From positions 166,048 through 230,047 of IMG/VR virus record IMGVR_UViG_3300042516_005475: a DNA stretch of 64,000 nt. One strand, written 5' to 3'. Below, in pieces: positions 23,435 to 64,000 of the stretch (the stretch's first letter is position 1; every line of letters starts with the position of its first letter). Below the pieces are notes generated by a model. That model ran no database searches. It saw nothing but the letters and a program-made list of their open reading frames with translations, and was not told the origin of the DNA. The position numbers were made by a program, and so were the translations under genes.

Positions 23435-24574
23435 ATGAAGATTACCTACGACACGCTTTATTCTGCCGACAGTAAGAACAACATTCGCATTTGGCGAATG
23501 GAACAGGATGGTGCGCAGTACCACACTACTTCAGGCTTGGAAGATGGTAAGCAGGTCACTACAGAGTGGTCTACTGCTGAGCCTAAGAACACTGGCAAGG
23601 CTAACGCTACTACTGCTACTCAGCAGGCCACTCTAGAGATTGAATCTCAATACGCTAAGAAGCTCAAGAGCGGTTATTTCCGAAGCAAGAATGATGTCAA
23701 TAAGATTACCTTTATTGAGCCTATGCTTGCTCAACCACTACATAAGCTCGCTAAGCAGCCTGACTTTGCGAATGAGAAGTGGGGCTTGCAATGTAAGTTC
23801 AACGGTAATCGATGCATTGCTACTAAGAATGGATTGTTCTCTCGTACTGGAGAGAAGTACTATAGTGTCCCACACATCGAGGGAGCTCTTAAGAGTTTCT
23901 TTGAGGTATGTCCAGCAGCTGTGCTAGATGGAGAATTGTTTAACAATCATCTCCGTACTCAGCTTAACGAGATCAACAAGCTTATTCGTAAGTCTAAGCA
24001 TATTAGCCAAGAAGACTTTGCTAAGAGTGAAGAGCTTGTTAAGTTCTACATCTATGATGGATACAATTTCTGTGGTTATAATGAGCTTTCTGCCTATCAT
24101 CTTCGCAAGAAGGCAATTGATAACTTCTTGCTCACTTGTAAGCTCAAGTGTTTGGCTAGTGTAGAGACTATTGCTATCAATTCTACTGATCAGATGAAAG
24201 AAGAGTTTAATAGACTCTTGGCTGATCAACAAGAGGGCGCTATTTTGCGTTGGATGGATGCTCCTTACGAGCACAAGCGCTCTAAGTACCTTGTTAAGGT
24301 CAAGGTTGATGATGATAGCGAGGCTACTATTGTCGACATTACTGATGGAGATGGTAACTGGAAGGGTGCTGCTACTAATGTTACATTGAACTGGAAGGGT
24401 AAGGTGTTTGATGGTGTGTTCAAGGGCAAGTATGAGAAGCGAGCTGATATCCTCAAGGATAAGAAGAATTGGATTGGCAAGGAGGTTACCTTTCTCTACA
24501 TGGGTCTCACCGGACTCGGCACCCCGAATTTCGCCCGAGTCGACCCTGACAACTGCTTCAAAAATGACCGCTGA
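23435..24574 (+). CDS. ATP-dependent DNA ligase
   Basis: IEPMLAQ, KFNGNRC (KxDG-type motif I), LDGELF, EGAILR, KRSKYLVKVK, C-terminal OB fold. Confidence 0.88.
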   Translation: MKITYDTLYSADSKNNIRIWRMEQDGAQYHTTSGLEDGKQVTTEWSTAEPKNTGKANATTATQQATLEIESQYAKKLKSGYFRSKNDVNKITFIEPMLAQPLHKLAKQPDFANEKWGLQCKFNGNRCIATKNGLFSRTGEKYYSVPHIEGALKSFFEVCPAAVLDGELFNNHLRTQLNEINKLIRKSKHISQEDFAKSEELVKFYIYDGYNFCGYNELSAYHLRKKAIDNFLLTCKLKCLASVETIAINSTDQMKEEFNRLLADQQEGAILRWMDAPYEHKRSKYLVKVKVDDDSEATIVDITDGDGNWKGAATNVTLNWKGKVFDGVFKGKYEKRADILKDKKNWIGKEVTFLYMGLTGLGTPNFARVDPDNCFKNDR

Positions 24575-29337: not shown

Positions 29338-30468
29338 TTGAGTCTATTAAAAAGGCTATACCTCAACCTTACTTAAGGCAGAAGATTTCTCTTGTTACAA
29401 GTATTAAACTAAATCAAAGTTGTGATATTGAGCAGGACTTGTCTACTAATATTAGAGACAATATTTGTTCTCATTTGTTCTGGGAACTTAAGAGAGAAGA
29501 TTCTAATTTCTTGCATAATGTTAATATCTATTAAAAATGCTATTCATGAGGCAGAGTCTCGGGCTTACTTTAGGCAGAACCTATCTGTTAATAACAATAT
29601 TAGAATGTATCTTAATTCTAATATTAAAAGAGACTTGTGTACTAATATCAGAGACAATCTTCATTCTCCTTTGTTCTGGGAATTGATAAGAGACTTCGAT
29701 TAATCTCAACATTAATGAATACTGCTAAAGAGTTTAGTGCTAATCATAAAATTCATACCAGACTCTATACGGATTTGCGGTTGAGTATGTTTGATGTGTT
29801 TAATTTTAATTGTTCACCAACGAGTAAAGAACTCTTAAAAAGTATATCTGATAATCTTAGACCCATTAACTTTATTAGCAATCAGATATATAGTAACTTA
29901 AATATTGAAAAATATGAATGAGATATCAATATCTATTAATAAAGAAATAATTGAAATGACTAATCAAGTTGATGTTATGATTGAAATGGCAAAAGATTCT
30001 GACAAATTAGAGAGTGAGAATTTTATTGCAAAACTAAACAATATTCCTTGGCCTGAGCCATTAGATCCTCCAACTACTACTGCTGAGGCAGAAGCCAGAC
30101 AAAGAAGGTTTGAAGATGATATCAATTAATAAAGAAATAGGTAAATACATTAATGGTTTAAAGGATTAATATGGAAGAATGTAAAGCTGCTGTACCTACG
30201 AAGAAAAACATGGGGCACTTCATACGCAAGTGGTATTATGGAGCTCTCTTTTGGATGTATTTGAACATATGGTGTCGGTATTGTTATCGCCATGTTATGC
30301 GATGGATGCATAAGTTTAATTTTCACCACACCACTGTAGTTAATATTGTAGAAGAAAAGAATGAATTGACAGGTAAACATCAACGCAAGCATTTGTGGTG
30401 TCAATGGTGTGGATTGCGAGGCGACATTTTAAAGTTTAATCATGATGAGTAATTGAATAAATAATATT

Positions 30469-31706
30469 ATGTTCAACGAATTAGCTAACTCTCTTATTCA
30501 AGAGAGTTTCCACCCAATCAGAGCTAAAGAGCGTATAAAAAAGTTAATTGAGACCCCTCAAGGAGCATTCCAATATGCTTTAAAAATTAAAAAAGGTAGA
30601 GCACCAGAAGTTGAGCCTATTATTTTAAAAAAAGCCTCTACAGCTATTCAATATGCTGCATTTATTATTAAAGGTAGATGGCCAGAGGCAGAGCCAATAA
30701 TATTAAAAAATGCTGCTACAGCTTACAATTATGCGCTTAATGTAATAGACGGTAGATGGCCAGAAGCTGAGCAAGTAATATTACAAAGCAATAATGCTTC
30801 TATCGCGTCATCTTATGCTGCGTTTGTAATAAATGGTAGATGGCCAGAGGCTGAACCAATAATTAAAGATAATCCTAGCGCTTCTCTCTCCTACGCAAAA
30901 TATTTACTAAAGGAAAGATTCCCAGCTGGAGAAAAAGCAATAAAAGAGAGCCCCGCACATGCAAAAGACTATGCTATTTTTGTTCTAAGAGATAGATGGC
31001 CTGAAGCTGAGCCTACTATTAAAAAGGATGAAGAACAATGGGAAAGTTATAAAGATTACTTTGGAATAGAGGAAGAAGATTAATATGCCATTAAAACCTA
31101 TTAATACTAAACCTAGAATAGATAAACTAAAGAAATGGCCTTATCATGCATATTATATTGCTAAAGATATTAAAAAAGGCAGATGGCCAGAAGCTGAACC
31201 TTATATCAAAAACGATGCCAGATGGGCATATTTCTATGCCAGAGACATCATCAAAGGCAGATGGCCAGAGGCTGATTCTGTGATCATGAATTCCAGATGG
31301 GCTGTAGCATACCTCACCATTATTTAATATGCCACTAAAACCTCTTAAAACTAAAGAAAGATTAAATGCTAAGATAGCTGAGATAAAATCATTACAACAT
31401 CGTTATAGTGCTGCTTCGGTCGCTAGAATGTCTTTTGAATTAGCTAATGGTATTGAAATACGCATACCAGAACTAGAACCCTTTATATTTAAAGATCATT
31501 GGGCTGCATATGAATATGTTAGATCAGTAGTAAAGAAACCTTTGCCAGAAGCTGAACCAATCATTCTAGATGACCCATGGACTGCCTTTTATTATGCTGT
31601 TAAAATTAAAAAAGAGAGATGGCCAGCAGCAGAACAAGTACTAAAAAACAACCAGTTAGAAGGTTTTTGGAACAAATATAAAGAAAAATTCAATATTAAA
31701 GACTAA
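30469..31706 (+). CDS. three tandem WPEAEP helical-repeat genes (30469-31083, 31085-31327, 31329-31706)
   Basis: ~24 aa unit A..YA..VIKGRWPEAEP.I; TAA-T-ATG junctions; TAAATA 30458-30463. Confidence 0.75.
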
Positions 31707-31788
31707 TTTGCCAGCCTCGCTGAATAAATCTGCCGCAAAAAAAAGCTTGAACTGCCTGTGAAAAGTTATAGAGATAATAAATATAAAC

Positions 31789-32094
31789 ATGAGCAACATC
31801 AATGACCCAATTTTCGAGGCTTATAGAGATATGGATCGTTCAGCAGGATTTAGAAGATTCATGGCTAGTCAACAAAACAAACCAGAGACTAATTCAGAAG
31901 AACAATCTAGCTGGGCAGATAAAATCTCTGCGACATCTGAACATGGACAAATGGTAGCTAATAAACTAAAAGAAATATTCAAAGAGAATCACGGATTATC
32001 ACCAGCATTGTGGGGAAGAGCCTTGAAGATATGCAATGAGTTAACTAAACTAATTGATGAAGCTAATTCAAATATGGGGAAAATGATTAAATAA
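31789..32094 (+). CDS. hypothetical late protein
   Basis: TAAATA 31778-31783; MSNINDPIFE leader. Confidence 0.6.
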   Translation: MSNINDPIFEAYRDMDRSAGFRRFMASQQNKPETNSEEQSSWADKISATSEHGQMVANKLKEIFKENHGLSPALWGRALKICNELTKLIDEANSNMGKMIK

Positions 32095-32104
32095 TAAGAA
32101 AAAG

Positions 32105-32133
32105 AAGAGCCCTCTGTTTCGAGGGCTTTTTTT
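32105..32133. terminator. probable bidirectional terminator
   Basis: A-run, AGAGCCCTC/GAGGGCTTT hairpin, T-run between convergent genes. Confidence 0.75.
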
Positions 32134-32878
32134 ATCGTCTATTAGAATTAATTGAAGATTGTACATTTCTCATAGTAGTATTTCTTCTGTTACCTACATC
32201 ACTAGACATGTTACGCAATTCATCTGCACTTAAATTACCTTGCTTTAAACGCTCTCTTTTTAGTCTCAAATCTTGCAAGTCTGCTAACATTTGTTTGTAC
32301 TTCTCTTTAATTTCTGGAGAAAGCTTAGGGTCTTTTAATTTATTGTTTATACTTGCCTCTTGTTGCGCGTATGGATCAGGCTCTTGATTAGGGGTTTGCT
32401 GGGATTGGGATTGATAAGCACTTACTGGAGTCCCGCAATTAAGGCAAAATCTATCTCCAGAGTTTAATTTAGAACCGCAGTTACCACAAAAGCCTCCTGC
32501 TTGTTGCTGTTGTTGATTCTGATTAGATCTTTGCTGTTGTTGATTCTGATTAGTCTGCTGTTGTTGATTCTGATTAGATCTTTGCTGTTGTTGATTCTGA
32601 TTAGTCTGCTGTTGAGTTGGTGTACTATTGTTCAAAGCTTCATAAGCAGCCTGTATTTTAATAAAATCATTATGAGTATCTCTCCCTGAGGTGTCAGGAT
32701 GATATTGTATAGATAATTTTCTAAAAGATTTCTTTAATTCATCTTTGGATAAATTACCAGCATTATTAATACCATATTGCTGCATTATTTGTATAGCCTC
32801 ATCTCTTGAATAAGTTTCTTCCAAAAAAATATTACTGCCAAATAAAACCTCATCAATTAAAGAGCTTAAAAGTCTCAT
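32132..32878 (-). CDS. J-domain (DnaJ-like) protein with Q/N repeat and zinc ribbon
   Basis: LKKSFRKLSIQYHPD...FIKIQAAYEAL; Q/N tract; FCGNCG...FCLNCG. Confidence 0.85.
   Translation of the reverse strand: MRLLSSLIDEVLFGSNIFLEETYSRDEAIQIMQQYGINNAGNLSKDELKKSFRKLSIQYHPDTSGRDTHNDFIKIQAAYEALNNSTPTQQQTNQNQQQQRSNQNQQQQTNQNQQQQRSNQNQQQQQAGGFCGNCGSKLNSGDRFCLNCGTPVSAYQSQSQQTPNQEPDPYAQQEASINNKLKDPKLSPEIKEKYKQMLADLQDLRLKRERLKQGNLSADELRNMSSDVGNRRNTTMRNVQSSINSNRR
32506..32614. repeat. alternating 27/24-nt tandem repeat encoding the Q/N tract
   Basis: gattagatctttgctgttgttgattct and gattagtctgctgttgttgattct units. Confidence 0.85.
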
Positions 32879-32946
32879 AAGAATATTTATGAAATTTTCC
32901 TAAAAAAGCTTGAACTGCCTGTGAAAAGTTCATATCATAAGTAGGA

Positions 32947-33243
32947 ATGTTTAAAGAAGACGACTCCATCCAACCGTTCACTGGCTCCATCGATGCACTC
33001 CTTGAGCAATCTATGATGCTAGATCCTAATGCTATTGCTCTTCAGGTAGAAGAAGAAAAGTATAATCTGGGTATGTTGGAAATTATGCGTATGTTCGAAT
33101 GTACTTACGAAGAGGCTGAGTTCTTGTTCAATGAGGCTCAACAGCAAATGATCAAACAAGAGCTTGAGGCGCTCATCGCTGAGGGTAAAGTAAAGATCGT
33201 CGGAACCGATGAAAGTGGGAATACCCTGTATGCCTCTGCCTGA
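32947..33243 (+). CDS. hypothetical acidic protein
   Basis: 98 aa after TTGAAC-17-TATCAT promoter. Confidence 0.55.
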   Translation: MFKEDDSIQPFTGSIDALLEQSMMLDPNAIALQVEEEKYNLGMLEIMRMFECTYEEAEFLFNEAQQQMIKQELEALIAEGKVKIVGTDESGNTLYASA

Positions 33244-33313
33244 GTTTCCCGGAGAAACTTCTTGAGGTTCCCCACGTTCGCCTCCATAATGTATGGGTAG
33301 TTAAGAACATCAT

Positions 33314-34222
33314 ATGGACCTCAACATTACCAAATCCGACTTCATCCGCGTTGCCGACGTCAAGATCAGCGATATCTTTTATCGCCGTCTTCAGACCGGC
33401 ATTACTAAGATCGACGAGTTCATGAGCGGTGGTTTCTTGCCTGGCTCTAGCTTTACTCTGGCTGCTTCGCCTGGTACTGGTAAGACTACTCTTATGCTGC
33501 AGATCCTTGAGTCTCTTGCTAAGCAAGGCTACAAGGTTGGTTACATCTCCGGTGAGGAGAATATTATGCAGGTTGCCTATACCTGTCAGCGTATCAAGGT
33601 TGAGAACGTTATGGTTCGCAACGAGACTAACATTAACGAGATTAAGAAGGTGATGCAAGACTTCGATCTTATCATCATTGACAGCTTTCAGTGCTTGACT
33701 GGCGATGTTAATATGAGCTCTGTTGAGCGTGAGAAGTATATCCTCAAAGAGCTGTTGCCTGAGGCTAAGTCTACTGAGTGTGTCATTGGCTTCATTATGC
33801 ATATGACTAAGGATGGTAAGAACATGAAGGGTTCTACTTTGGTTCCGCATTCTGTTGACGCTAACCTTACTCTCGATATTGACGAAGAAGGTGATGACGG
33901 CACTCGCGTTCTTGGTACTCAGAAGAATCGCTTTGGCTCTCTCAACCAGGTCAGCTTGTACATGGGTTCTACTGGTTATGACTTTGATGCCAAGATTGAG
34001 GTGTTCAATGCTGAGAAGAAGGCTGCCCCTAAGAAGGACCGCAAGGCTGCTGACATGGAGAAGATTATGAATCTCGGCAATGAGTTTACTATTGAGCAGG
34101 TTATGCCTATTGCTAACGGAGACTATTGCCGCGCTCAGTACTTGCTGCGTAACTTGCTCAGTAGCAACAAGCTGACTAAGAGCGGTCGCGGCAATGAGGC
34201 TAAGTTTCAGGTCATTAACTAA
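33314..34222 (+). CDS. radA: RadA/Sms-like RecA-family ATPase lacking N-terminal Zn finger and Lon-like domain
   Basis: GGFLPGS, ASPGTGKTT, YISGEE, IIIDSFQ, PHSVD, KNRFG. Confidence 0.85.
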   Translation: MDLNITKSDFIRVADVKISDIFYRRLQTGITKIDEFMSGGFLPGSSFTLAASPGTGKTTLMLQILESLAKQGYKVGYISGEENIMQVAYTCQRIKVENVMVRNETNINEIKKVMQDFDLIIIDSFQCLTGDVNMSSVEREKYILKELLPEAKSTECVIGFIMHMTKDGKNMKGSTLVPHSVDANLTLDIDEEGDDGTRVLGTQKNRFGSLNQVSLYMGSTGYDFDAKIEVFNAEKKAAPKKDRKAADMEKIMNLGNEFTIEQVMPIANGDYCRAQYLLRNLLSSNKLTKSGRGNEAKFQVIN

Positions 34223-34255
34223 TCAACAATAACAAACTATAACATAACAAACTAT

Positions 34256-34657
34256 ATGAAACGTAATAACAAAGCTGGTTTTACTCTCGTTGAGCTGATG
34301 ATTAGTGTCGTTATCTTTTTCATCGTTATCTCAACCATTATTGGTATTAGTGGCATTATTATTGGCAAGAGCGACGGTAAGCGAGTTGGTACTATTACTA
34401 AATTCAGTCACAAGGGCTTGTTTGTTAAGAGCTACGAAGGCGAACTCAATATGGGTGGTTTTCGCGATCGTACTGACAGTGAAGGTAAGCATAGCGTTGT
34501 TGGCAACGTTTGGGAGTTTAGCTGCAGCAATCCTGAGGTTGCTAAGAAGTTGGATAATTTGCTTGGCAAGCAAGTCGTTATTCAGTATCATCAGAGCTTC
34601 AAAGGGTTCAAGATGGATACTAGCTATGATGTTGTTAGCGTAGAGGAAGTGAAATAA
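34256..34657 (+). CDS. prepilin-type N-terminal domain fused to an OB-like domain
   Basis: KAG|FTLVELMISVVIFFIV; G.RVG.ITKFSHKG..VKSYEGEL C-terminal domain. Confidence 0.75.
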   Translation: MKRNNKAGFTLVELMISVVIFFIVISTIIGISGIIIGKSDGKRVGTITKFSHKGLFVKSYEGELNMGGFRDRTDSEGKHSVVGNVWEFSCSNPEVAKKLDNLLGKQVVIQYHQSFKGFKMDTSYDVVSVEEVK

Positions 34658-37600
34658 ATGAGACTCAAAGAGACTGGCGAATACAAAGAGCCAATTAGTC
34701 TCAAGTATGGCCAGAGCTTGTTCGTAGATATGTGGGATAAGTATTACCTCTACGAAGAATGCTCTGGTACATCTTTTGACTTTAGATTGAATAGATACTT
34801 AGAAGATAGGTCTCGTAGTATAAATTACTTTAATTCTAACTATATTAAGATGATTATAAAATGGAATCGTTAAAGAATAAATTCTACAACGAGTTGGATC
34901 TTAAATTAAGTGCCAATTTAACTAATCGTATGGATAATAAGTTGGCAAATAATTTTTATGGTTATTTGCTAAACAAGCTCAATTATAGTTTGTATTGGCA
35001 GCTTGATTTAGTTTACTGTAATCGAATTGCTGACGAGATACACTTATCCTTAACAGATGAAAAATGAGGCTCAAAATATGTCTATTATTCTAATGTTAGA
35101 AGACAAGTTAGTAGAAAGAGTTCGTAAAGATGTTCTCAAAAAGAGTATCAAGATAGACCCAAAAGTTGACGATCTACTTTATATTAATTTGAGTAGATCT
35201 ATTGTATCGTTAGATATACAATTAAGCGATGAGTTGATGGGATGGTAGAGATACTATGAAAAACATGAAGGGTAAATCTATAAAAGGTAAAATGATAATG
35301 AGACAGATGGCTGTCAAAGATTCTTTCTTTAATAATATCTCTAAACAATTAGGTAGAGGGTACAAGTGGAAGATTTATATTGATTTTGGTAATGATTTGT
35401 TTATTATAGAAGAAGCTAGTGATGAGATACATAAGAGCCTTTCTATAGAAAACTACAAAAAGAAGCTATGAAGCCAATCAAGAAAAAATTATTTGCATTG
35501 TACTTAGATAACCGATTGTATCAGGTTTTAAGTACGCAAATGTTTTTTGATGTTCATTGGGATATTTCAGGAAAATTGTTTAATGATTTGCATGATAAAA
35601 TGTTAACGGTTAGTCAAAGAGTTGAAAATAGACTAGTCAAAGAGAGGCGAATAGGAGAAGTATGACATCCATTAAAGGCAAACTACTAGAGCCAGATAAT
35701 AATGCTCTCTATAGTCTCGATTTAATCTCTAAGATTAATAATTTGTACAATAATATTCCAAAACATATAGATGGCCTTTTTCTTTTTAGGCAGCTATCAT
35801 TGATGTTGTCAGAAGAAATTAACGATGGCTTAAAAGATGAAATCAAGAAAAGAAAACTCTCTAAAAGAAAAACTATTTAACAAACTGCGAATAAAATTAG
35901 AGAGTAATCTGCTCTCTACCGTCTGTTCTGATCCTATTATCATCGACAATTTCAAAATAATCAGGAGACATAATTTGAGGCTAGCAATTAGGATTCGCAA
36001 TAGTACACTTATACCATATGTATATAAAGAATAAAGAGTCTATAATTTGTGCATTAAATCCTGTTTTTATTTCTACTATATTGGGCAGAGCGTTGAATGT
36101 AAAAGTTGACTGTAAACTTATAAGTGCATTACACTTTGCCTTGTCTGAAGAGCTTTTAAGTAAAGTTAGGATTAATATTTCTCAAGGAATATCGGACGAA
36201 TTATATGAAGAAAAAAAGCAAATCAATTAGTAAAAAAATTCTCCTCAATCAATTTAAGTTTCAAGATCAATTAGAAAATACAAGGCAGAAGTACTTTCAT
36301 AAAGAATTACGTATAGACTTCGAGATAAGCCTTTATAATAGGTTATATGTTCAGCTGACTTATGACTACCTGTAAAGTAAACATTCGTAAAGTGCTTTTA
36401 AGTCAAGTTAAAAAGCTGAAGCTTAACCTTGAAATTAATACATCTAAACGATTAGATAATAGTTTATATTGGGATCTCACTAAAAGAGAGAACCACATGT
36501 ATATTATTTTTTATCTACGTCCCAAAGCCATTTACAATGAACAGCTTAAAAAAGATTTATATTGATTCACTTGAACAAAATTTATTTCGTAAGACACAAA
36601 ATACTCTTGATAGAAAGATTGTGTCTGAAATGATTAAAAATATTAATCTATCTTTAGTGTGGGCTGTGCATGATGAGCTATATATAAACCCAATTAAACG
36701 TGAAAATGTCTCTAAGATCAAAAATTAATCGCTCTCTGGCTAGTCCATGTACTGATGATAGATTTAAAGAACTAAACAAAATAAGCACTAAAATTATTGC
36801 CACTTTACATACTCAATTGTATAATAATATCCAACAAACATTAGATCATCAAATATTCGTGGGACTATTAGGTATAAAACATGACATCAACAAAGAATAA
36901 AATTGTTAGTAGCGTTAGTCTTCACCTTGACACTTGTTTGTATAAACAAACAAATCAAAAAGATTATTTAAAATTGGTTGGTACTTTAGACGATAATTTA
37001 CATGAATTGTTACTTAATCAAATGTGCCTAAAGATTCATAGCAAACTCTTGTTTAACAGAGAAAACTTTATATACCTAAACTTTGAGGTGTTCTAGCAAA
37101 TGTGCCTAGATCTTCATAACAAACTCTTATTTAACAGTGAAACCTATATACCTTAAACTTTGCGGCACTCTATCTAAGTACATTAACAAACATGTTACTC
37201 TAGATAGATATTATGTCAGCCCTTATTATGGCAGCCCTTATTTTATTACCAAATATGATATTTCAAATAGTTCTTATAAACAATTGAAACATAAATTTGA
37301 TGATGAACTATTCGATGTAACCTACAACAATATTAACAATGCCATTAAGAAAGAACTGCTTAAAACTATTCATCGCTAATATTTTTGAAAAGGTGAATCA
37401 TGACAACCTGAAGGATATTTGCCCTAAACTTCTCTCCGAAATTTTAGTTGACTATGAGGTCAAGGTAGCCCATAATATAGCCAATCACATAGAGTTAGCA
37501 ACCTTTAGCCATATTATTGAGGATCATGAACTCGTGCGCTGGTAAAGTATCAGTCAGAAAAGAAATTAATCGGGTGATATATAGTACTTACGCTATATCT

Positions 37601-40600
37601 AAGTTGACAAAATCAAAGAGAGATGTTATAGAATCAAAACTATTCTACAATACAGACTTACCCTACAATACTGTACATTGGCATTTATATCATGAGCTTA
37701 AGACAGGAAATTGAAATGAGAATGTTAGAGAGTAAGCGTAATATGTGTGCTCATTACACATTGAATGCTTTCTCAAATGCTAAGCCTAAAAACAAAATAG
37801 AGCAAAAAATATGGGGAGATAATTCTATTTCTGATCTTATTCAATTGCTAGAATACAATTTACGAGAACATCTATATGACTAAACAAAAAAGACAACCAG
37901 TAAATTTCTCTTGCTTCGATAACCTATACGTGACTTCTGAAAAGTTGTTGCTTAATTCTTTGTATTATACTTTAAATGATAACATTCAAATAAAGCTTTA
38001 TAATAACATATATAATAATTTTAATCGCAATTTAAGGACTCAACTAAAAAATGAAGGCTATCGCTCGTAAATTAACTTTTTTAAATGGGACCCCTTATCG
38101 AGTTAAATGTGGTAAGAAGTTGTTCTATTATTTAGAATTAATATTTCATAAAAAATTAGGACAAGAATCTGTGAGTAGAATTAATGTACAATTAGTAAAT
38201 GAATTACTAAACAATGAAAAGCGTTAAAATTCTAATTATAACTAATGCATTTTTTCATGCTAGTATTAGAAATGCTGTCGTCTCTAAATTAAAAGATGAA
38301 GCTATATCAGATCTAGAAGTTAAAATGTGGACTGACCTATATGGATTAATATGGTCTAATGTTTATGAACCTTTAAGCAGTGAACTCAATAAAAACTGAA
38401 ATAACTAATAAAGTACTTTATCATTGGAGTATAAAGTATAATAAGATTCTCTCATCTGATGCTCTCATTAGTTATTGGAGAAATAATCCATTTGCCTTTG
38501 TTAACGATGCCTTGTTCGTTGGCTTAAATGATAAACAAAATGAAGAAATCTGATAACATCAAGAAACAACTACAAGGGTTTAAAGACACAATCTACAAGG
38601 TCTACTACATGAAACAAACATCTTCTTTCAATAGGTGTATTGACTTATATGGTGAACTCAGCCATAATCTTAACAGCAATTTAACTAATCACACTGAGAG
38701 GCAATTAAAAAATGAAAGAAGAAACGCACATTTTAAAACTGGAAAAAGAGCGCAGAAGGCTCTATACTAGAATAAACAATAGCTGTGGAGTAGTTACAGC
38801 TATGTTGCAAACACCCTTTTATTATAAAGAGCTCTATCAACCAATAGAATTTGCAATGATCATAGAGAATGAATTAGAAAATGAAATCGATTAGACTAAA
38901 AATGATAGTTAAAATGCACTTCAGCAGAGATACTCGAATTAAAATTACTCCTGAAACTGTAGAAAAACTATACAACCCCTTATGGGCTAATCTACAAGTT
39001 AACATCTCACGAAATTTAGCCAATAAATTGATATTCAAAAATATTTTAGAAGACTATGAAAAATAAAGAGGTTCTCCATAAAATGAATGAGCAACGCAAT
39101 TGGGCTATTGGTAGATGCAATCCTATTATTGATAAAATTATTAACCGAGAGATTTTACTAAATAGTTTTGTAGATTTTAGTTTTCAAATGCGGTCGCTTA
39201 ATGTTAATGTAATGAGAGATTTGTTAAATGAAACCTAAAACCCTCAGATTTAAAATACAAGATCAAATCAATGATAGCTTCTGTACTACCCGAACTCTGG
39301 GCAGAAACGATAAGTGGGAAGAATTAGATAGTACTTTGTTATTTTTCTTATATTATGAGTTAGAGCATATTATTCAGCATTCTTTATCAGAGGAGTTAAA
39401 TGAAGCCAAAATATCTTAGACACAAAATAAACGAGAAATTACATGCTCATCGTTTTAGAATCATTTTACATGAGCAAATAATAGATTTGTCTAGGCAAGA
39501 TTTATATAGAAAGTTAGCTAACCCATTGTATGATAATAGCCTTGAGGATACAATAGGGTGGGAATTGAGAAAACAAATAAAGAATGAAATCAAAAAACAT
39601 TAGACAAAAAATACAAGAGAACTTATTTGATCTTCGTTTTAGAATTGCCTTACAAGAGCAAATAATAGACTTGCTTAAAGATCAATTAATTAAAAAGTTA
39701 GCTAATCCATTGTATACTAATAGCCTTGAGGATATAATAGACTCTGAACTTAGAAAACAAATACTGAATGAAGCCAATTAAAACTAGTTTAAACGTACTT
39801 TATCTTTACCATTCATTGACAGAATTGAGTACTATTGTTCGTAACAAGTTATCCAATGAGCTTTATCACCCTTTATTTGTTAATATTGATAGGGGCATTA
39901 GCATGATAAAGAGGAGAGAACTTAAAAAATGAAGCCAATTAAAGATAAACTTAGAGAAAAGCTATTCTATAACTGTTATTATAGATTTAGCAATGAGTAC
40001 TATAAAAAGGTATCGTATGGATGCTATGTTAGGGTGTCAGGCAAACTAAACATTGAACTCAAAGAAAAATGTGATGAGGTAAATTATCAAGTAAGTGAAC
40101 AATTACTCTGGAGCAATGAAAACAAAAAGAAACTTATATTTTAACATATCCAATAAGGCAGTAGTTATGGGTCAAAAATTACACCTCAGTGTGAGTAAAC
40201 AAACTAACTTAGAATACTTTCAACCAGTTGAAGTTAAACTAAATTGTGCTTTGCATAAAAACTTAGAGGCTCAATTGTTCTACGTTATAAAAGACTCATT
40301 AGTTCATCATAAAACAATTTCAACATAAATGAAACCTTTAACTAAAGAAATACATTCAAAATTGATTTGTAAATTAGAAACAAAATTGAATAGACCATAT
40401 TATAGTAACCTAAAAAACGAGCCAAGATGGAAACTACAAAATGCATTTAATGTTGTTTATAATGACCTAGACCAAATAAACAAAAGGTTAGAACACTTCT
40501 GAATGCTTATAATATTATCTATGACTTTAATCACTCATAAAATAATGGAAAGGCTAGTGAGCAAAATGGAAATGAATCTGTATAGAGCCATGTATTACTC

Positions 40601-40927
40601 TCTCAAAAACAAATGTTACACTCGCTTTCAAAACCAATTCAACTCCGAATTGTATCACCTTATACACAATAGATTAAACTTCTCCATTAGGAGCAACTTA
40701 AGAGAAGAATGAAACCATTAACAGTTAGCATAATTAATAAACTATACAATGAATTGGAAACTAATTTGTATAATGCCTTGTATTGGAACACTAAAGCTAA
40801 TGCATATACCGCTTTACAATCAAGACTCTTTGCTGGGTTATATATCGAGTTGAATAATAGATTAAACGAAACTGTTGATAATAACCTCTTTGATGAGCAA
40901 TTAAAACTTCATAACCATACCAATTAA
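34658..40927 (+). other. tandem array of 30+ translationally coupled ~55-80 aa helical mini-genes
   Basis: Continuous overlapping ORFs, many starting MK(P/S)(I/L)K.K(L/I), with L..xLYxxL periodicity and ATGA-type overlaps. Confidence 0.7.
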
Positions 40928-40965
40928 AGGAAGATTAGTTAAGAGAGGCATATTAAATAACCTAT

Positions 40966-42260
40966 ATGTCTCTTAAACCATTAAAGACTAAAGAGCGATT
41001 AGATGCCTTGAAGAACAATCCAAAGGCATTATTAGCTTTTTGCAAAGATGTATTAAAGGCTCCATGGCCAGAGGCTGAACCATACATCTTAAAAGATACT
41101 ATGGTTGCTATGCATTATGCCTATCATGTTAAACAGAAGCTATGGCCTGAGTTAGAAAATATACTAGATGGTACTAGATATATGCCAATGTATAACTGGA
41201 ACATGAGATATTTTACCTATTAATATGCCTCTTAAATCAATCAAACTAAAAGATAGATTACAAAAGAAAAAGAAAGATCCTTTTGAAATCATTAATTTTT
41301 GCAGATACACTATAATGGGTCGCTGGCCAGAAGTTGAACCTTTTTTACTAAAACATAAAGATCCTTTTTGGGCATTGTTATATGCCAGAGACATCATCAA
41401 AGGGCGATGGCCAGAAGCAGAACCTCTTATCATGAAAGAGGCATACATGGCATACAAGTACGCTAGAGATGTAATCAAAGGACCTTGGCCTGAAGCCGAG
41501 AAACATATTAAACGAGATGCTGCTGCCTGGAGCGAATATACAAAAAAGGTACTAAACAACTCATAACATATGCCCCTAAAACCAATAAAGACTAAAGAGA
41601 GATTTGAAAATCTTATAAAAACTCCTAGAGGTGTTGTTACATATGCTGAGCATAAAAAAACGCCTGTACCTGATCTTGAGCATGTAATATTACTAGATGA
41701 CTTGGCAATCTATTGGTATGCCTATTATGTTTTACACCGCAGATGGCCAAAGGGAGAACAGATATTGTTGAGAGGAGCTTTTCCTATATGGGGACCAAAT
41801 GCCTATGTTCTAAGCAGATATGCAGAAAATATAATAAAAAATCGTTGGCCAGAGGCTGAACCATTTATTAAAAAAGATTCATCAGAATGGGAAAATTACT
41901 CAAACAACTTTAACATTCAAGACTAATATGCCCCTCAAACCAATAAAGACTAAAGAAAGATTAGAACAAGTAAAGAAAGATGCAGGATTAGCATATTATT
42001 TTGCTAAAGATGTAATCAAGGATCGTTGGCCAGAAGTTGAACCTATTATTATGCAGGATGCCTGGTGGGCATGGAAGTATGCTGTAGACGTTATTAGAGC
42101 ACCATGGCCAGAGGCTGAACATGTTATCTCTAAAAAATCTATGCCTGCTTATAATTATGCTGTATTGGTAATAAAAGATAAATGGCCACCTGGAGAAAAA
42201 GCTATTAATAAATTAGCCTACTCCAAAAAAGGATATAAACATTTTGTAGACAATTTATAA
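40966..42260 (+). CDS. four tandem WPEAEP helical-repeat genes (40966, 41225, 41570, 41928)
   Basis: M(P/S)LK(P/S)(I/L)K.K(E/D)R N-termini, RWPEAEP.I repeats, TAAATA 40954-40959. Confidence 0.75.
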
Positions 42261-42422
42261 ACTAAAGGAGCAATGAATAAAGAATTCTCTATTAAACAAT
42301 ACACCTTGTCACAAAAGATCATGATGATACTAATAACACTAGTTGTTACTGTATTACCCATACTGTTCTGGATGTGGATCACATCATACCTAATCAAATG
42401 TAACAAAGATGTCATGATGAAA

Positions 42423-43169
42423 TTAAAAAGGAAATAATTCACATTGTCTGGATGCAGGGTAATTTTGAGTAACATCCAAAAATTCATGCTGTTCCATTTT
42501 TACAAACTTGTCCCAGCAATTGTAATGCTCAAAATAATATGAAAAAAATAATTCAGGAAAGAAATTTGGCCCGTTAAAATTGTGCTTCCAGGCATACATT
42601 TTTTCTGAAAATTCTGGGCTGTACAGCTTGTCAAATAAATTAAAATAATTATGAAAAGAGTTGGGCAGTATAAAACTTGTGTCCATAAAAAATTTAGGTG
42701 CATCGAGGAACATGTTGTAGCTACAGTTGGCATAAAAATTTTCCTTATTTAATGTTGTTAAATCTGGAAAAGTTATGATGTGACAAGAGTCATAACGCCC
42801 TCTAATAATAAAGTCATATTGAGACCAATCAAATAAATTACTAACATTCTGCAAACCATGCAATTGAGAGAAATGCATCTGATTGTTGGTAGTTCTGCCT
42901 CCTGCATTATTAAAATTAAATCCATGCAGTTTGATTAATTCTGGGTAGTCAGCCACATGCTGCTGCATTAATAATCGCTGAGGAGCATATGCCTCCATAA
43001 TTTTTGTCTCTGTTTCTTGTTTGTTCTGTTCACTGGTGTACCAACATTGACAATATACATCTGTAGAGTACTTGCTGATGATTTTATCAATTAGATAATC
43101 TTTGGAGTTGTTGTTTCTAAACAACCCACTGAGAAGTAATGCAATTTTCATGATGGTACTTATCTTCAC
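42423..43169 (-). CDS. putative glycosyltransferase-like protein
   Basis: KIALLLSGLFRN, DVYCQCW, YDFIIRGRYD, FFPELFF. Confidence 0.55.
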   Translation of the reverse strand: MKISTIMKIALLLSGLFRNNNSKDYLIDKIISKYSTDVYCQCWYTSEQNKQETETKIMEAYAPQRLLMQQHVADYPELIKLHGFNFNNAGGRTTNNQMHFSQLHGLQNVSNLFDWSQYDFIIRGRYDSCHIITFPDLTTLNKENFYANCSYNMFLDAPKFFMDTSFILPNSFHNYFNLFDKLYSPEFSEKMYAWKHNFNGPNFFPELFFSYYFEHYNCWDKFVKMEQHEFLDVTQNYPASRQCELFPF

Positions 43170-43558: not shown

Positions 43559-44036
43559 ATGGAAGAAACTGAAACTGAACCTACTATTACGATTGTGCTT
43601 GGAGCTGACATGAAGCCTGCCAGAAAGCCTATTGAGTTTCACCGTGTGTTGGATAGTGATGAGACGTTTGGATCGGTCTATGAAGAATATCCTTGTCTTT
43701 GGAAGTACATTGAGCTTATCTGTAAGGAGTATCTTGGAACCAAGACATTAGACTTGATGTATGCCTACGACAATCCTAAAGATCGCTCTAGAGGTAGGCT
43801 CTTTCTTGGTCAGTGGAACGATGGCTATGTAGAGCGCTAATATGACGTCCAAATATAATAGCTTAGACTATGAGCTAGAGTCTCGACTAAGGACAAGATT
43901 GTTTGATGCTACTGAAAAGAAACTAAACATGAATCTATTTGAAGTGTTGTCAAAGTCTTATAGCAATAGGCTATATGTAAACAATACAATTGCATTTCAC
44001 AATCCACTATGGGATGAACTTAAACAAAGCAACTAA
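43559..44036 (+). other. two small hypothetical ORFs (43559-43840, 43842-44036)
   Basis: Co-oriented ORFs; the second resembles the mini-gene array. Confidence 0.5.
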
Positions 44037-47732: not shown

Positions 47733-47999
47733 TTATTTGCGAGCGTTTAAAAAGGCTGCTACATCTGGACTGATTGGACCTTTATCGGTGGCCTGTGGTC
47801 TAGGCTTTACATCTGGGCGAGTTGGTTGAAGAGGGTGTCTCTTAGGTGCTAATGGCTTTTGTGGGCCTGGAGTTGGTAGAGGTTTTGTATCTGGTTTAAT
47901 ATCAGGCTCAACCTCTGGCTCTTCAACAGGTGCTGCTGGAGCCTCAAACAAGGTTTTGCTTAATAAATTATTGACTAAATCGTCAAAGTTATCTTTCAT
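47733..47999 (-). CDS. small Pro-rich protein
   Basis: TLFE|APAAP...PE/KP/TP-rich; coupled to 46580 gene. Confidence 0.6.
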   Translation of the reverse strand: MKDNFDDLVNNLLSKTLFEAPAAPVEEPEVEPDIKPDTKPLPTPGPQKPLAPKRHPLQPTRPDVKPRPQATDKGPISPDVAAFLNARK

Positions 48000-54210: not shown

Positions 54211-55134
54211 ATGAACAGCATTTTCGATGAGTATTACGAAACTTTAATCAAAGAGGCTATTGGTTTGAATGAAATGCCAGTAAGCCGCATTGCCTCTGAT
54301 TTAACATCTTTTAAGCCAAGCAAAGAGCTTGGCTCATATTCAATTACAGATATAACAGGTGAGGATGAAGAAAAAATTAAACAGGTACTTGTTAAGGTTG
54401 GTGAATATGTAATTGACAATCTTAAAGAACCATCTTCTGCTTCAAGAAAAGAGTATCAAGATGTAGTCGCTGAATTTATTAGAAAGGCTATTAATGACGT
54501 ATTCCCCGATTCCAAAAAGGCTTCAGGAGGCAAGCCTTTTACTGCCAGAGATTACTATGCTGCAAGAGCTATTATCAAGGCTTTCGAAGACCAGAATATT
54601 ATTAACACCAATGATACTGGTGGTAAGATTGAAAAAGGCTCTGTTGAAAAAGATGAGCTACCTCAAACAGTAGCTGACATTACTCAGGACGTTTCAAATG
54701 AAGTAGAGGCTAAGGTACAAGATGATTTGGATGATACCAAGGAAAAGCAAGAAGAGACTCAAGTAGAAGTTGGTGAGATAGGTTTAGTCAAAGGTGATAA
54801 GTTTGAACCAACAGCAGTATATTCTGTTGATGAGACATCTGATAAAGAAAATCTAAGCCCATTAGAGAAGTATGCTCTTGATTATGTTGAACCTGAAACA
54901 AGTGGCATTGATATTGTAAAGATGCTTAAAAACTCAATTAAGCTCAGAAACAAAGAAAACGAAATCAGAGATCTATTAGATTCTCTTGTGAAGAAAGGTA
55001 TTTTAGCCAAGACTGGTGATGATGAAGATTCTGGCAGAGGAGTTTCAAAGACTGGAGATGATTCAGTTGAGGATATATTAAAGGGCATGGGGCCAAGAGA
55101 GAATCCCGAAACTGGAGTTCTAGGCGATTTATAA
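54211..55134 (+). CDS. acidic late protein, putative internal head protein
   Basis: TAAATA 54196-54201; ...YETLIKE leader; D/E-rich. Confidence 0.55.
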   Translation: MNSIFDEYYETLIKEAIGLNEMPVSRIASDLTSFKPSKELGSYSITDITGEDEEKIKQVLVKVGEYVIDNLKEPSSASRKEYQDVVAEFIRKAINDVFPDSKKASGGKPFTARDYYAARAIIKAFEDQNIINTNDTGGKIEKGSVEKDELPQTVADITQDVSNEVEAKVQDDLDDTKEKQEETQVEVGEIGLVKGDKFEPTAVYSVDETSDKENLSPLEKYALDYVEPETSGIDIVKMLKNSIKLRNKENEIRDLLDSLVKKGILAKTGDDEDSGRGVSKTGDDSVEDILKGMGPRENPETGVLGDL

Positions 55135-63418: not shown

Positions 63419-64000
63419 TTAGAAGTATACAACAGATGTTGCTGGGGTGAAGGCAATGCCAAGACCCTTAACAACAACCAATGTATAGTACAAGTTAGCA
63501 CCAAAGATGTTATCGACAACACCATAACGTGTTAGCAAGCCAACACGAGGAGCGAAGTCGTTAGGACCGATTGTGCGTTGTACCATTACTGGGATGTATG
63601 GACAATAGATAATACCAGTGTCATAGAACTCTGGTCCCTTATAACCCAATAGTGCGTACTCAACTGTGGTACGTTGACCTGTTAGGTTTTGAGCATCGGT
63701 ACGAGTATCGCGGTAGACTTGGAAACGACCACCAACTGTACCAACCTTAGCAACACCTGTTGGTTGAGTGTTAACGTTACCGTCAACAGTCATCCAGCTG
63801 AACTCAGGAAGAGCCTCGAGAATAGCGCAAACTCTTGGAGTAGCGATAATGAAGTTAGCAGCACCACGGCGGTTACGAACTGCAATTCTGTTTGCTTCAA
63901 CGATCAACTTCTGATAGAAGTCGCGATTACGCTCAGCCAACCAGCGACCGTCAGCAGCAGAAGCTGTCCAGCTTGTTACGGAACCGTAAGAAGCATACTT
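63419..64000 (-). CDS. gp23: major capsid protein, T4 gp23 family, C-terminal part running off the window
   Basis: ADGRW..ER, RRGAANFIIATP, VGTVGGRFQVY.D, GYKG...DTGIIYCPYIP, P..GLLTRYG; frame open to 64000. Confidence 0.93.
   Translation of the reverse strand, partial: KYASYGSVTSWTASAADGRWLAERNRDFYQKLIVEANRIAVRNRRGAANFIIATPRVCAILEALPEFSWMTVDGNVNTQPTGVAKVGTVGGRFQVYRDTRTDAQNLTGQRTTVEYALLGYKGPEFYDTGIIYCPYIPVMVQRTIGPNDFAPRVGLLTRYGVVDNIFGANLYYTLVVVKGLGIAFTPATSVVYF

What the first reader, a model, noticed from the sequence alone, without database searches (positions are those of the whole stretch)
30469..42260. Seven WPEAEP repeat proteins in two clusters with a shared N-terminal tag
Seen: ~24-aa repeats in varying copy number; six genes start M(P/S)LK(P/S)(I/L)(K/N)(T/L)K, and the seventh (30469) has the related HPIRAKERI after a capsid-targeting-like leader. 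The tag resembles the MKPIKxKL starts of the adjacent mini-gene array. Both clusters follow TAAATA. Inference: variable alpha-solenoid binders, possibly co-packaged through the tag.
Basis: partly seen in the sequence, partly recalled or inferred. Interest (0 to 1): 0.65.

Follow-up and report, generated by a model that had tools for sequence, protein, structure and literature searches.

The report
Phage late-gene helical repeat protein clusters
A lake-water T4-like giant phage carries seven copies of an undescribed, virus-only family of short helical-repeat proteins with a variable surface. They sit in two late-gene operons, and one copy has what looks like a T4-style signal for being packed into the capsid.

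Summary
Seven + strand genes (30469-31706 and 40966-42260) encode 2 to 6 copies of a repeat with the signature RWPEAEP. The period is 26 residues, not 24. Six start with MPLKP(I/L)(K/N)xK(E/D)R(L/F). The seventh has the same motif behind a 12-residue leader.

The genome is a 230-kb T4-like myovirus from lake metagenomes, with homologs of gp21, gp23, gp43 and gp55. The family is large: at least 1,329 clusters, all unnamed. It is almost entirely viral, has no Pfam model and is nearly absent from cultured phages. AlphaFold gives a regular helix-hairpin solenoid. Framework positions are conserved and one face of helix A is hypervariable.

TAAATA is the core of a genome-wide T4-type late-promoter motif 11-12 nt before the ATG. 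It also heads the capsid and portal genes. Within each cluster the genes are joined by TAA-T-ATG.

The 30469 leader ends in a gp21-type (L/I)xE site. That site falls exactly where homology to residue 2 of the paralogs begins, and it belongs to a leader class enriched among late genes.

The "tag" is best read as the N-terminus of the mature module (free heptapeptide plus capping helix), not a packaging signal. Its resemblance to the mini-gene array is weak. Function is inferred, not shown.

The parts
30456..30463 (+). Late-promoter-like element AATAAATA heading cluster 1. TAAATA starts 11 nt before the ATG at 30469.
   Evidence: Genome-wide motif (A/C)ATAAATA + 5-6 nt + ATG at 57 of 329 ORFs, including the gp23 capsid gene and a portal-sized gene. 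A gp55 late sigma homolog is present. The motif is kept in relative L210.
30469..31083 (+). 204-aa paralog: 12-residue leader, tag-like segment, 6 repeats and an acidic C-terminal cap. pI 5.9.
   Evidence: AF2 pLDDT 82, all helix hairpins. Orthologs of 183-196 aa at 44-50% identity.
30469..30504 (+). Leader codons 1-12 (MFNELANSLIQE), read as a CTS-like propeptide ending in an I-Q-E site.
   Evidence: After a cut behind E12 the new N-terminus aligns residue for residue with residue 2 onward of the six tagged paralogs. The leader is nearly invariant in orthologs. The leader class is enriched in late-motif ORFs, 23/57 against 45/272, p = 1.3e-4. T4 gp24 and Alt N-termini have the same pattern.
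31085..31327 (+). 80-aa tagged paralog with 2 repeats. pI 9.8.
   Evidence: Joined to the previous gene by TAA-T-ATG. Near-identical ortholog in L210.
31329..31706 (+). 125-aa tagged paralog with 3 repeats (the first degenerate) and an 11-residue insertion after the tag.
   Evidence: TAA-T-ATG junction.
40954..40959 (+). TAAATA late-promoter-like core heading cluster 2, 12 nt before the ATG at 40966.
   Evidence: Kept in relative L211 although the upstream genes differ.
40966..41223 (+). 85-aa tagged paralog (starts MSLKP) with 2 repeats.
   Evidence: Ortholog in L211.
41225..41566 (+). 113-aa tagged paralog with 3 repeats.
   Evidence: Orthologs P0001-P0007 at 71-93% identity; the six whose sequences were read (P0001-P0005, P0007) keep the tag.
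41570..41926 (+). 118-aa tagged paralog with 3 repeats and one 34-residue spacing.
   Evidence: Ortholog in L211.
41928..42260 (+). 110-aa tagged paralog with 3 repeats.
   Evidence: AF2 pLDDT 94. Residues 1-7 are coil (first ten residues average pLDDT 65), residues 8-15 form a capping helix, followed by three 12+7-residue helix hairpins and a terminal helix.

Best explanation
These seven genes are a lineage-specific expansion of a large, undescribed family of 26-residue helix-hairpin (alpha-solenoid) repeat proteins that is essentially restricted to viruses. In this T4-like lake phage they form two operons. Each is headed by a T4-type late promoter placed so close to the ATG that the mRNA would have little or no leader. 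The downstream genes are translationally coupled through TAA-T-ATG junctions.

Each repeat has a conserved framework: Y7, A8, R15, W16, P17, E18, E20 and I23. Five or six hypervariable positions (2, 3, 6, 9, 10 and 22) mostly lie on one face of the long helix. Repeat number and gene content turn over between close relatives. The most likely reading is a set of diversified protein-binding modules made late in infection.

One paralog (30469) carries a 12-residue T4-style capsid-targeting propeptide. I infer that it enters the prohead core, is cut after Glu12 by the gp21-type protease, and is delivered with the DNA.

The shared 'tag' is the N-terminus of the mature module: a free, strongly conserved heptapeptide plus the capping helix of the solenoid. 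All paralogs inherited it by duplication. It is not itself the packaging signal. The free heptapeptide may still be a docking motif for an unknown common partner.

Shown: genes, repeats, family size and viral range, predicted fold, variable face, promoter motif statistics, leader statistics.
Inferred: late transcription, cleavage, packaging, binding function.
For: - Genes and repeats.
- T4-like genome: Peptidase_S77 (gp21) E = 3e-34; Gp23 at both record ends; gp43-type polymerase and gp6-type wedge; gp55 homolog E = 3.5e-9.
- Family size and range: 1,329 clusters at E <= 1e-3 in the 112-357 aa band, all unnamed. 64 IMG/VR stretches, often with 78-nt spacing and tandem paralogs. ESM Atlas clusters are 80-100% viral. 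Of 80 bacterial or archaeal pattern hits scanned, 3 have more than one motif and only one has the 26-residue spacing.
- Fold: pLDDT 82 and 94. The best structural neighbours are designed helical repeats and HEAT proteins.
- Variable face: entropy 3.3-4.1 bits at positions 2, 3, 6, 9, 10 and 22, against 0.2-1.3 bits at the framework positions, over 1,165 repeat units.
- Turnover between relatives.
- Late motif.
- No Shine-Dalgarno use and TAA-T-ATG junctions.
- Leader: exact junction, conservation in orthologs, enrichment among late-motif ORFs p = 1.3e-4, T4 gp24/Alt pattern, and similar leaders on other family members (14/48 against 84/591, p = 0.008).
- Literature: T4 internal proteins share only a CTS and are diverse anti-defence proteins (PMC3012670). 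gp21 cuts after Glu and removes N-terminal propeptides (PMC5694885).
- Tag selected at the protein level.
Against: - There are no expression or proteome data. All 24 runs that hold this DNA are DNA runs.
- (L/I)xE is a short motif: 12.8% of internal 13-residue windows have one. The cleavage specificity of this phage's protease is unknown.
- The protease-leader complex prediction gave no answer.
- Only one of the seven proteins has the leader, so packaging would not explain the other six.
- The extreme conservation of charged tag residues (K4, K9, R11) and of a heptapeptide modelled as disordered goes beyond what a structural cap needs.
- No binding partner is known. A hypervariable face is compatible with binding but does not prove it.
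- The late-promoter reading rests on analogy with T4. Such a short distance to the ATG is unusual for T4 itself.
Confidence: 0.45

Rival explanations
1. The N-terminal tag is a targeting signal, shared with the mini-gene array, that brings all these small proteins into the capsid, directly or by docking on the 30469 protein.
For: - The first seven residues are modelled as a free peptide yet are the most conserved part, under protein-level selection.
- Both clusters carry the late motif.
- Precedents exist for N-terminal signals shared by otherwise diverged packaged proteins: the T4 CTS (PMC3012670) and SPN3US gp53/gp54 (PMC5694885).
- Two mini-genes are the best non-family matches to the tag profile.
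Against: - The tag has no (L/I)xE site and does not resemble the leader class used by about ten late ORFs of the same genome.
- In 30469 the tag lies behind the leader.
- Residues 8-15 are a confident capping helix.
- Mini-gene matches reach only 5-7 bits, and only 3 of about 32 mini-genes start MKPIK.
- No ORF within the array (34658-40927) carries the late motif.
- In relative L211 cluster 2 is not next to such an array.
Confidence: 0.15
2. The proteins are structural or assembly parts of the virion (scaffold accessory, decoration, fibre or baseplate adaptor or chaperone) rather than binders of host factors.
For: - Late-promoter motif shared with the capsid, portal and other large structural-size genes.
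- Solenoids often act as assembly adaptors (general knowledge).
- The window also holds baseplate genes at 45-60 kb.
Against: - Gene number, order and repeat number differ between near-identical relatives.
- The family is almost absent from cultured T4-like phages.
- The clusters lie among small accessory genes, not inside the structural modules.
Confidence: 0.15
3. The tag is only a passive by-product of tandem duplication together with the TAA-T-ATG restart junction. It would be kept by a nucleic-acid-level need for re-initiation without Shine-Dalgarno pairing, not by protein function.
For: - Four of five junctions are TAA-T-ATG followed by A-rich codons.
- The genome does not use Shine-Dalgarno sequences: 7.5% of genes against 6.9% at random positions.
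Against: - Invariant Leu3 and Arg11 use four codons each, from both codon families, and Pro2 uses three. The constraint is therefore on the peptide.
- The first gene of cluster 2 and the leader-bearing gene keep the motif without such a junction.
Confidence: 0.05

Closest known systems
T4 internal proteins (IPI, IPII, IPIII) and Alt, which carry a capsid targeting sequence
   Same: - T4-type head genes are present.
- A short N-terminal leader ends in (L/I)xE in a late gene.
- The loci are plastic, and the body of the protein is free to diversify.
- The known role of T4 IPs is counter-defence after injection (PMC3012670, PMC5694885; T4 gp24 and Alt N-termini read).
   Different: - There is no sequence similarity to any T4 IP.
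- Only one of the seven paralogs has the leader.
- The body is a repeat solenoid, not a small globular protein.
- Packaging and cleavage are untested.
HEAT / ARM / PBS-lyase-HEAT-like solenoids and de novo designed helical repeat proteins (DHRs)
   Same: Stacked helix-turn-helix repeats. VIA-align gives Z = 8.1, rmsd 2.3 A over 95 residues to a designed repeat protein (9k7u_A), Z = 5.5 to DHR49, and Z = 6.9 to the PP2A A subunit.
   Different: - The period is 26 residues (12+7-residue helices), against about 37-47 for HEAT and 42 for ARM (general knowledge).
- No Pfam repeat model matches at E <= 1.
- There is no PDB sequence match and no Foldseek match at E <= 0.001.
- The Z values are within the range expected for unrelated helical repeats.
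SPN3US gp53/gp54: paralogous ejection proteins with identical N-terminal propeptides
   Same: Paralogs in a giant phage that keep a common N-terminus while the rest diverges. The N-terminus contains protease motifs ending in Glu (PMC5694885).
   Different: - They belong to a different phage group and protease family (S80, motif A-x-E).
- There is no repeat architecture.
- Here the shared N-terminus lacks a matching cleavage motif.
Ankyrin-repeat gene expansions of poxviruses and giant viruses
   Same: Virus-encoded repeat scaffolds in many tandem paralogs, with variable repeat number and a variable surface, thought to bind host proteins (general knowledge, not tested here).
   Different: A different repeat (33 residues) in eukaryotic viruses, with no sequence relation. 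BFVD hits to ankyrin proteins are insignificant.
Pfam PF05798 (Phage_FRD3, T4 Frd.3) and PF13693 (HTH_35)
   Same: Long family members give sub-threshold or partial hits to a roughly 30-residue stretch of these models. T4 Frd.3 has one segment like IIRNRYPEL.
   Different: - None of the seven window proteins reaches Pfam's cut-off. The only such hit is HTH_35 on 41928, at 13 bits against a cut-off of 25.
- FRD3 hits stay below the cut-off (27.6 against 28.1 bits).
- The single over-cut-off HTH_35 score has no individual stretch that passes.
- This is motif-level likeness only.

Membership tests
Unnamed viral 26-residue 'RWPEAEP' repeat family (metagenomic) | Tandem units of 26 residues with the framework Y7, A8, R15, W16, P17, E18, E20, I23 | tested here: met
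   22 units in the window. The same framework and a dominant 26-residue spacing hold in 258 proteins and 1,165 units.
Unnamed viral 26-residue 'RWPEAEP' repeat family (metagenomic) | Significant full-length sequence similarity to other members | tested here: met
   42 hits down to E = 6e-54. 1,329 hits at E <= 1e-3.
Unnamed viral 26-residue 'RWPEAEP' repeat family (metagenomic) | Lineage-specific N-terminal head shared by tandem paralogs, followed by a variable number of repeats | tested here: met
   This is seen in at least five other IMG/VR lineages. One 85-kb contig alone has more than 25 listed ORFs with one shared head. Here the head is the MPLKPIK tag.
HEAT / ARM repeat families (Pfam PF02985, PF13646, PF00514) | Match to the family profile above its cut-off | tested here: not met
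   No such Pfam family at E <= 1 for any of the seven proteins.
HEAT / ARM repeat families (Pfam PF02985, PF13646, PF00514) | Solenoid of antiparallel helix pairs | tested here: met
   AF2 models. Z = 6.9 to the PP2A A subunit and 6.8 to symplekin. This is fold-class likeness only.
T4-type CTS-bearing packaged proteins | The genome encodes a T4-type prohead protease and core-based head assembly | tested here: met
   Peptidase_S77 at 115 bits and Gp23 at 183 and 140 bits.
T4-type CTS-bearing packaged proteins | N-terminal leader of about 10 residues ending in (L/I)xE | tested here: met
   Met for 30469 only (I-Q-E at residues 10-12). Not met for the six tagged proteins.
T4-type CTS-bearing packaged proteins | Late transcription | tested here: inconclusive
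   A late-promoter-like motif and a gp55 homolog are present, but no RNA data exist.
T4-type CTS-bearing packaged proteins | Presence in the virion and removal of the leader by the protease | not testable with these tools
   This needs virion mass spectrometry. The complex prediction gave no answer.
Pfam PF05798 Phage_FRD3 | Profile match above the gathering score | tested here: not met
   No hit for the window proteins. Long relatives stay at or below 27.6 bits against a cut-off of 28.1.

The most novel reading that the evidence does not exclude
The RWPEAEP repeat family is a widespread class of phage proteins that are packed into the capsid and injected. It would act as a natural library of binders on a fixed scaffold, which T4-like and giant phages diversify by changing repeats and duplicating genes to neutralise host defence or take over host factors. 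The lineage-specific N-terminal heads would be the sorting signals. Many of them look like T4 capsid-targeting leaders, and here the leader is on 30469. The conserved MPLKPIK peptide would be a second, unknown docking signal.
Probability: 0.2. Interest if true: 0.75.

Novelty: new variant of a known kind. Interest (0 to 1): 0.5.

Why it matters
The family is large: at least 1,329 clusters at 90% identity in one length band alone. It is almost exclusively viral, repeatedly expanded in tandem in large phages, and has no Pfam model, no solved structure and no literature.

Its very regular 26-residue hairpin, with five or six variable surface positions per repeat, resembles engineered binder scaffolds. 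If some members are injected with the DNA, as the T4-like leader on 30469 and on many relatives suggests, the family would be a new source of phage counter-defence or host-takeover proteins. It would also be a compact natural scaffold for binder design.

The work also exposes the late-promoter grammar of an uncultured lake phage, which appears to make leaderless late messages and not to use Shine-Dalgarno sites.

Tried and rejected
- **Pfam and PHROGs** on the seven proteins gave nothing usable. There was no significant Pfam hit. PHROG 11280 and 6091 matched only one repeat-length stretch and have unknown function.
- **Cultured phages.** Megablast and tblastn against 50,697 records found no match for the window DNA or for the 204-aa protein. 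A consensus-like relative found only Salicola phage SCTP-2 gp435 at E = 3e-3, which has two degenerate repeats inside a 648-aa protein.
- **Structure searches.** The PDB profile search found nothing. Foldseek against PDB and BFVD found nothing at E <= 0.001.
- **Literature.** No paper contains the motif.
- **Tag against other lineages' heads** (hhalign): only the first repeat aligns, so no homology of the tag was shown.
- **Complex prediction** of the gp21 homolog with residues 1-45 of the 30469 protein returned no answer (score 0.01). It counts neither for nor against binding.
- **Sigma-70 promoter and terminator scans** of 28-45 kb were not above shuffles.
- **Pattern scan of bacterial genomes.** Of the 80 scanned, 3 have more than one motif. 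These are mostly chance hits in GC-rich genomes.
- **Read laying.** The 'skip' joint 41436>41924 carries letters identical to the 3' end of gene 31085, so it is cross-mapping of cluster 1, not a deletion. Raised depth at 41221-41421 is multi-mapping of the conserved repeat.
- **DNA mimicry rejected.** Six of the proteins are basic (pI 8.8-9.8).
- **Failed or uninformative calls.** With one protein it returned only the same phage.
- **Not used.** The large representative search was left out, because the word search already gave a large family.
Full report
**1. What is in the sequence**

Seven + strand ORFs lie in two tight clusters, 30469-31706 and 40966-42260. They encode 204, 80, 125, 85, 113, 118 and 110 residues. 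They carry 6, 2, 3, 2, 3, 3 and 3 copies of a repeat whose signature is G-R-W-P-E-A-E-P. The repeat period is 26 residues, not about 24. A search of the whole 230,047-bp record finds these seven genes and no others.

Six proteins begin MPLKP(I/L)(K/N)xK(E/D)R(L/F/I). The 204-aa protein has the same motif at residues 13-23, behind a 12-residue leader. The motif is held at the protein level. Across 15 genes from this phage and two close relatives, invariant Leu3 and Arg11 each use four codons and Pro2 uses three.

**2. The genome**

The window is the last 64 kb of an IMG/VR virus record that CheckV rates as complete. The phage is T4-like:
- a Peptidase_S77 (gp21) prohead protease;
- a Gp23 capsid gene split across the two record ends, so the record is a permuted whole genome;
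- a gp43-type DNA polymerase and a gp6-type baseplate wedge;
- a homolog of the T4 late sigma factor gp55.

The same DNA is present in at least 24 lake-water metagenome runs. None of them is an RNA run.

**3. The family**

No Pfam model matches. PHROG matches are weak, cover one repeat, and have no assigned function. Cultured phages lack the family apart from a marginal hit in Salicola phage SCTP-2. No paper contains the motif.

The family is nevertheless large:
- 42 relatives were found for a 113-aa member.
- 1,329 clusters at E <= 1e-3 were found for the 204-aa member within its length band. All are unnamed or 'hypothetical'.
- A back-translated GRWPEAEP pattern finds 64 stretches in IMG/VR. 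Many lie on contigs of 190-480 kb, often with matches 78 nt apart.
- The same pattern in 596 Gb of bacterial and archaeal genomes gives mostly single chance hits. Of the 80 loci scanned, 3 have more than one motif and only one has the 26-residue spacing.
- ESM Atlas neighbours are 80-100% viral.

In several other phage lineages the family is also expanded in tandem. In each lineage the paralogs share their own N-terminal head, followed by a variable number of repeats. The 'shared tag' is therefore a local case of a family-wide architecture.

**4. Fold**

AlphaFold2 with family alignments gives pLDDT 82 for the 204-aa protein and pLDDT 94 for the 110-aa protein. Each repeat is a 12-residue helix, a short turn at G-R-W-P, and a 7-residue helix. 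The repeats stack into a solenoid.

Foldseek finds nothing significant in the PDB or BFVD. VIA-align finds only generic neighbours. The best is a designed helical repeat protein (Z = 8.1, rmsd 2.3 A, 95 residues). Then come DHR49, the PP2A A subunit and symplekin, at Z between 5.5 and 6.9. By the tool's own calibration these values show fold class, not kinship.

**5. Repeat anatomy**

I analysed 1,165 distinct units from 258 proteins.
- Nearly fixed: positions 7 (Y, 95%), 8 (A), 15 (R), 16 (W), 17 (P), 18 (E), 20 (E, 98%) and 23 (I).
- Close to random: positions 2, 3 and 6 at 3.9-4.1 bits, and positions 9, 10 and 22 at 3.3-3.5 bits.

Positions 2, 3, 6, 9 and 10 follow the i, i+1, i+4, i+7, i+8 rule, which places them on one face of the long helix. 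This is the layout of a binding scaffold. Binding itself is inferred.

Six window proteins are basic and one is mildly acidic, so DNA mimicry is unlikely.

Close relatives differ in gene number, order and repeat number within both clusters, while every member keeps the tag.

**6. Regulation**

TAAATA is not a chance neighbour.
- It lies within 40 nt upstream of 73 of 313 crude gene calls, against about 2.4% expected.
- Its position peaks sharply 11-13 nt before the ATG.
- The extended form (A/C)ATAAATA heads 57 of 329 ORFs. These include the capsid gene, a portal-sized gene and many large structural-size genes. They also include both cluster heads, at 30458 and 40954.
- Relatives keep it even where the upstream genes differ.

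With a gp55 homolog present, I read this as the T4-type late promoter (TATAAATA in T4, from general knowledge). The spacing would put the transcript start at or next to the ATG. That step is inferred.

The genome shows no Shine-Dalgarno signal: 7.5% of genes against 6.9% at random positions. Four of the five intra-cluster junctions read TAA-T-ATG, which suggests termination-reinitiation coupling.

**7. The leader of 30469**

The first 12 residues end in I-Q-E. A cut after Glu12 would leave an N-terminus that aligns residue for residue with residue 2 onward of the six tagged paralogs.

- Orthologs that are only 44-50% identical overall keep the leader almost unchanged.
- T4 gp24 and Alt, both known gp21 substrates, have the same kind of N-terminus (PMC5694885).
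- In this genome, an (L/I)xE site ending at residues 6-18 occurs in 23 of 57 late-motif ORFs against 45 of 272 others (p = 1.3e-4). It occurs in 12.8% of internal windows.
- About ten late ORFs share a pattern like M-x-F-(D/N)-x-L-x-x-x-L-L-E.
- Across the wider family, 14 of 48 distinct N-termini have such a site against 84 of 591 control ORFs (p = 0.008).

T4 internal proteins are diverse counter-defence proteins that share only a capsid targeting sequence (PMC3012670). It remains unproven, because the motif is short and no proteome exists.

**8. The tag**

In the 110-aa model, residues 8-15 form a confident helix that caps the first repeat. Residues 1-7 are coil, and the first ten residues average pLDDT 65.

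The tag has no (L/I)xE site, and in 30469 it sits behind the leader. Profile comparison with the heads of other lineages aligns only the first repeat.

I read the tag as the N-terminus of the mature module. The free heptapeptide is conserved beyond what capping needs, so a docking role for an unknown partner stays open.

**9. The mini-gene array**

About 32 overlapping ORFs of 54-80 residues fill 34658-40927. They form a weakly related paralog family.

Only three start MKPIK. The tag profile gives them at most 7.4 bits, although they are the best non-family matches. No ORF inside the array carries the late motif. In relative L211, cluster 2 is not next to such an array. The link is weak.

**10. 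Mechanism and rivals**

Best reading (confidence 0.45): these are late-expressed, diversified solenoid binders. One copy is sorted into the prohead by a cleavable leader and injected. The tag is the conserved N-terminus of the mature module.

Rivals:
- the tag is a packaging signal (0.15);
- the proteins are structural or assembly adaptors (0.15);
- the tag is a nucleic-acid restart element (0.05; contradicted).

**11. Novelty**

The fold class and the idea of CTS-sorted, plastic phage proteins are known. The 26-residue repeat family, its size and viral restriction, and its link to T4-like leaders are not described. I rate it a new variant of a known kind, with interest 0.5.

**12. Procedure notes**

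- No genetic code other than table 11 was used.
- The read laying stretch was 37000-43000, which is 6,001 letters and one over the operators' advice. It ran.
- The large representative search was not used.
- The one complex job gave no answer and is not counted as evidence.

Noticed in passing
Whole genome G000; in the window e.g. 30456-30463, 31776-31783, 40954-40959: A genome-wide motif (A/C)ATAAATA sits 5-6 nt before the ATG of 57 of 329 ORFs, including the capsid and portal-sized genes. It is probably a T4-type late promoter giving leaderless or near-leaderless late mRNAs. A gp55 homolog lies at G000:C1:28740-29048.
   Followed up: partly
Whole genome G000: There is no Shine-Dalgarno signal upstream of genes (7.5% against 6.9% at random positions). 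This suggests a host with SD-independent initiation, possibly Bacteroidota. The host was not determined.
   Followed up: partly
window 34658-40927 (plus 43842-44036): An array of about 32 overlapping ORFs of 54-80 aa forms a weakly related helical paralog family with lysine-rich N-termini. No Pfam hit for the two tested. One lake population (run X22) lacks the copy at 39584-39781 (a 184-nt skip between tandem paralogs).
   Followed up: partly
window 34256-34657 (+): A 133-aa phage protein has a prokaryotic N-terminal methylation motif (PF07963, E = 1.3e-7), i.e. a type IV pilin-like N-terminus. It lies directly before the mini-gene array.
   Followed up: no
window 32132-32878 (-): A protein with a DnaJ domain, a zinc ribbon and a long Q/N-rich repeat lies between the clusters. 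It has the late motif and an N-terminal L-I-D-E site. It is absent from the otherwise syntenic relative L210.
   Followed up: no
G000:C1 124460-124825(-), 163537-163905(-), 152548-152844(+), 149225-149815(-), 131835-133226(+), 111801-112544(+), 136235-136816(+); window 47733-47999(-), 54211-55134(+), 31789-32094(+): A class of late-motif ORFs has N-termini like M-x-F-(D/N)-x-L-x-x-x-L-L-E, resembling T4 propeptides or capsid-targeting sequences. They are candidate prohead-processed or packaged proteins. A cytidyltransferase-like ORF (G000 23525-24151, minus strand) starts MKTFNEIYEA but has no late motif in the scan.
   Followed up: partly
G000:C1 1-762(-) and 229547-230008(-) (window 63500-63961): The major capsid gene (Gp23 family) is split across the two ends of the record. 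The 'linear' record is therefore a circularly permuted complete genome.
   Followed up: partly
window 42400: Contigs from all four lake runs laid on the stretch carry one extra T after 42400 relative to the window. It lies in the short spacer after cluster 2. This is either an assembly error or a fixed difference.
   Followed up: no
L047, L037, L042, L053, L041, L032 (IMGVR_UViG_3300035181_001867, 84.9 kb): One viral contig carries more than 25 listed tandem ORFs of the same repeat family. All start with the same head of about 45 residues, which begins M-K-L-R-D-L-F-E-A, a T4 CTS-like start.
   Followed up: partly
L211 504-839: A relative's contig encodes a 111-aa protein of MORN-like repeats (recurring D-G-P-A-V-E-Y/F units) and a YopX protein just upstream of its cluster 2.
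   Followed up: no
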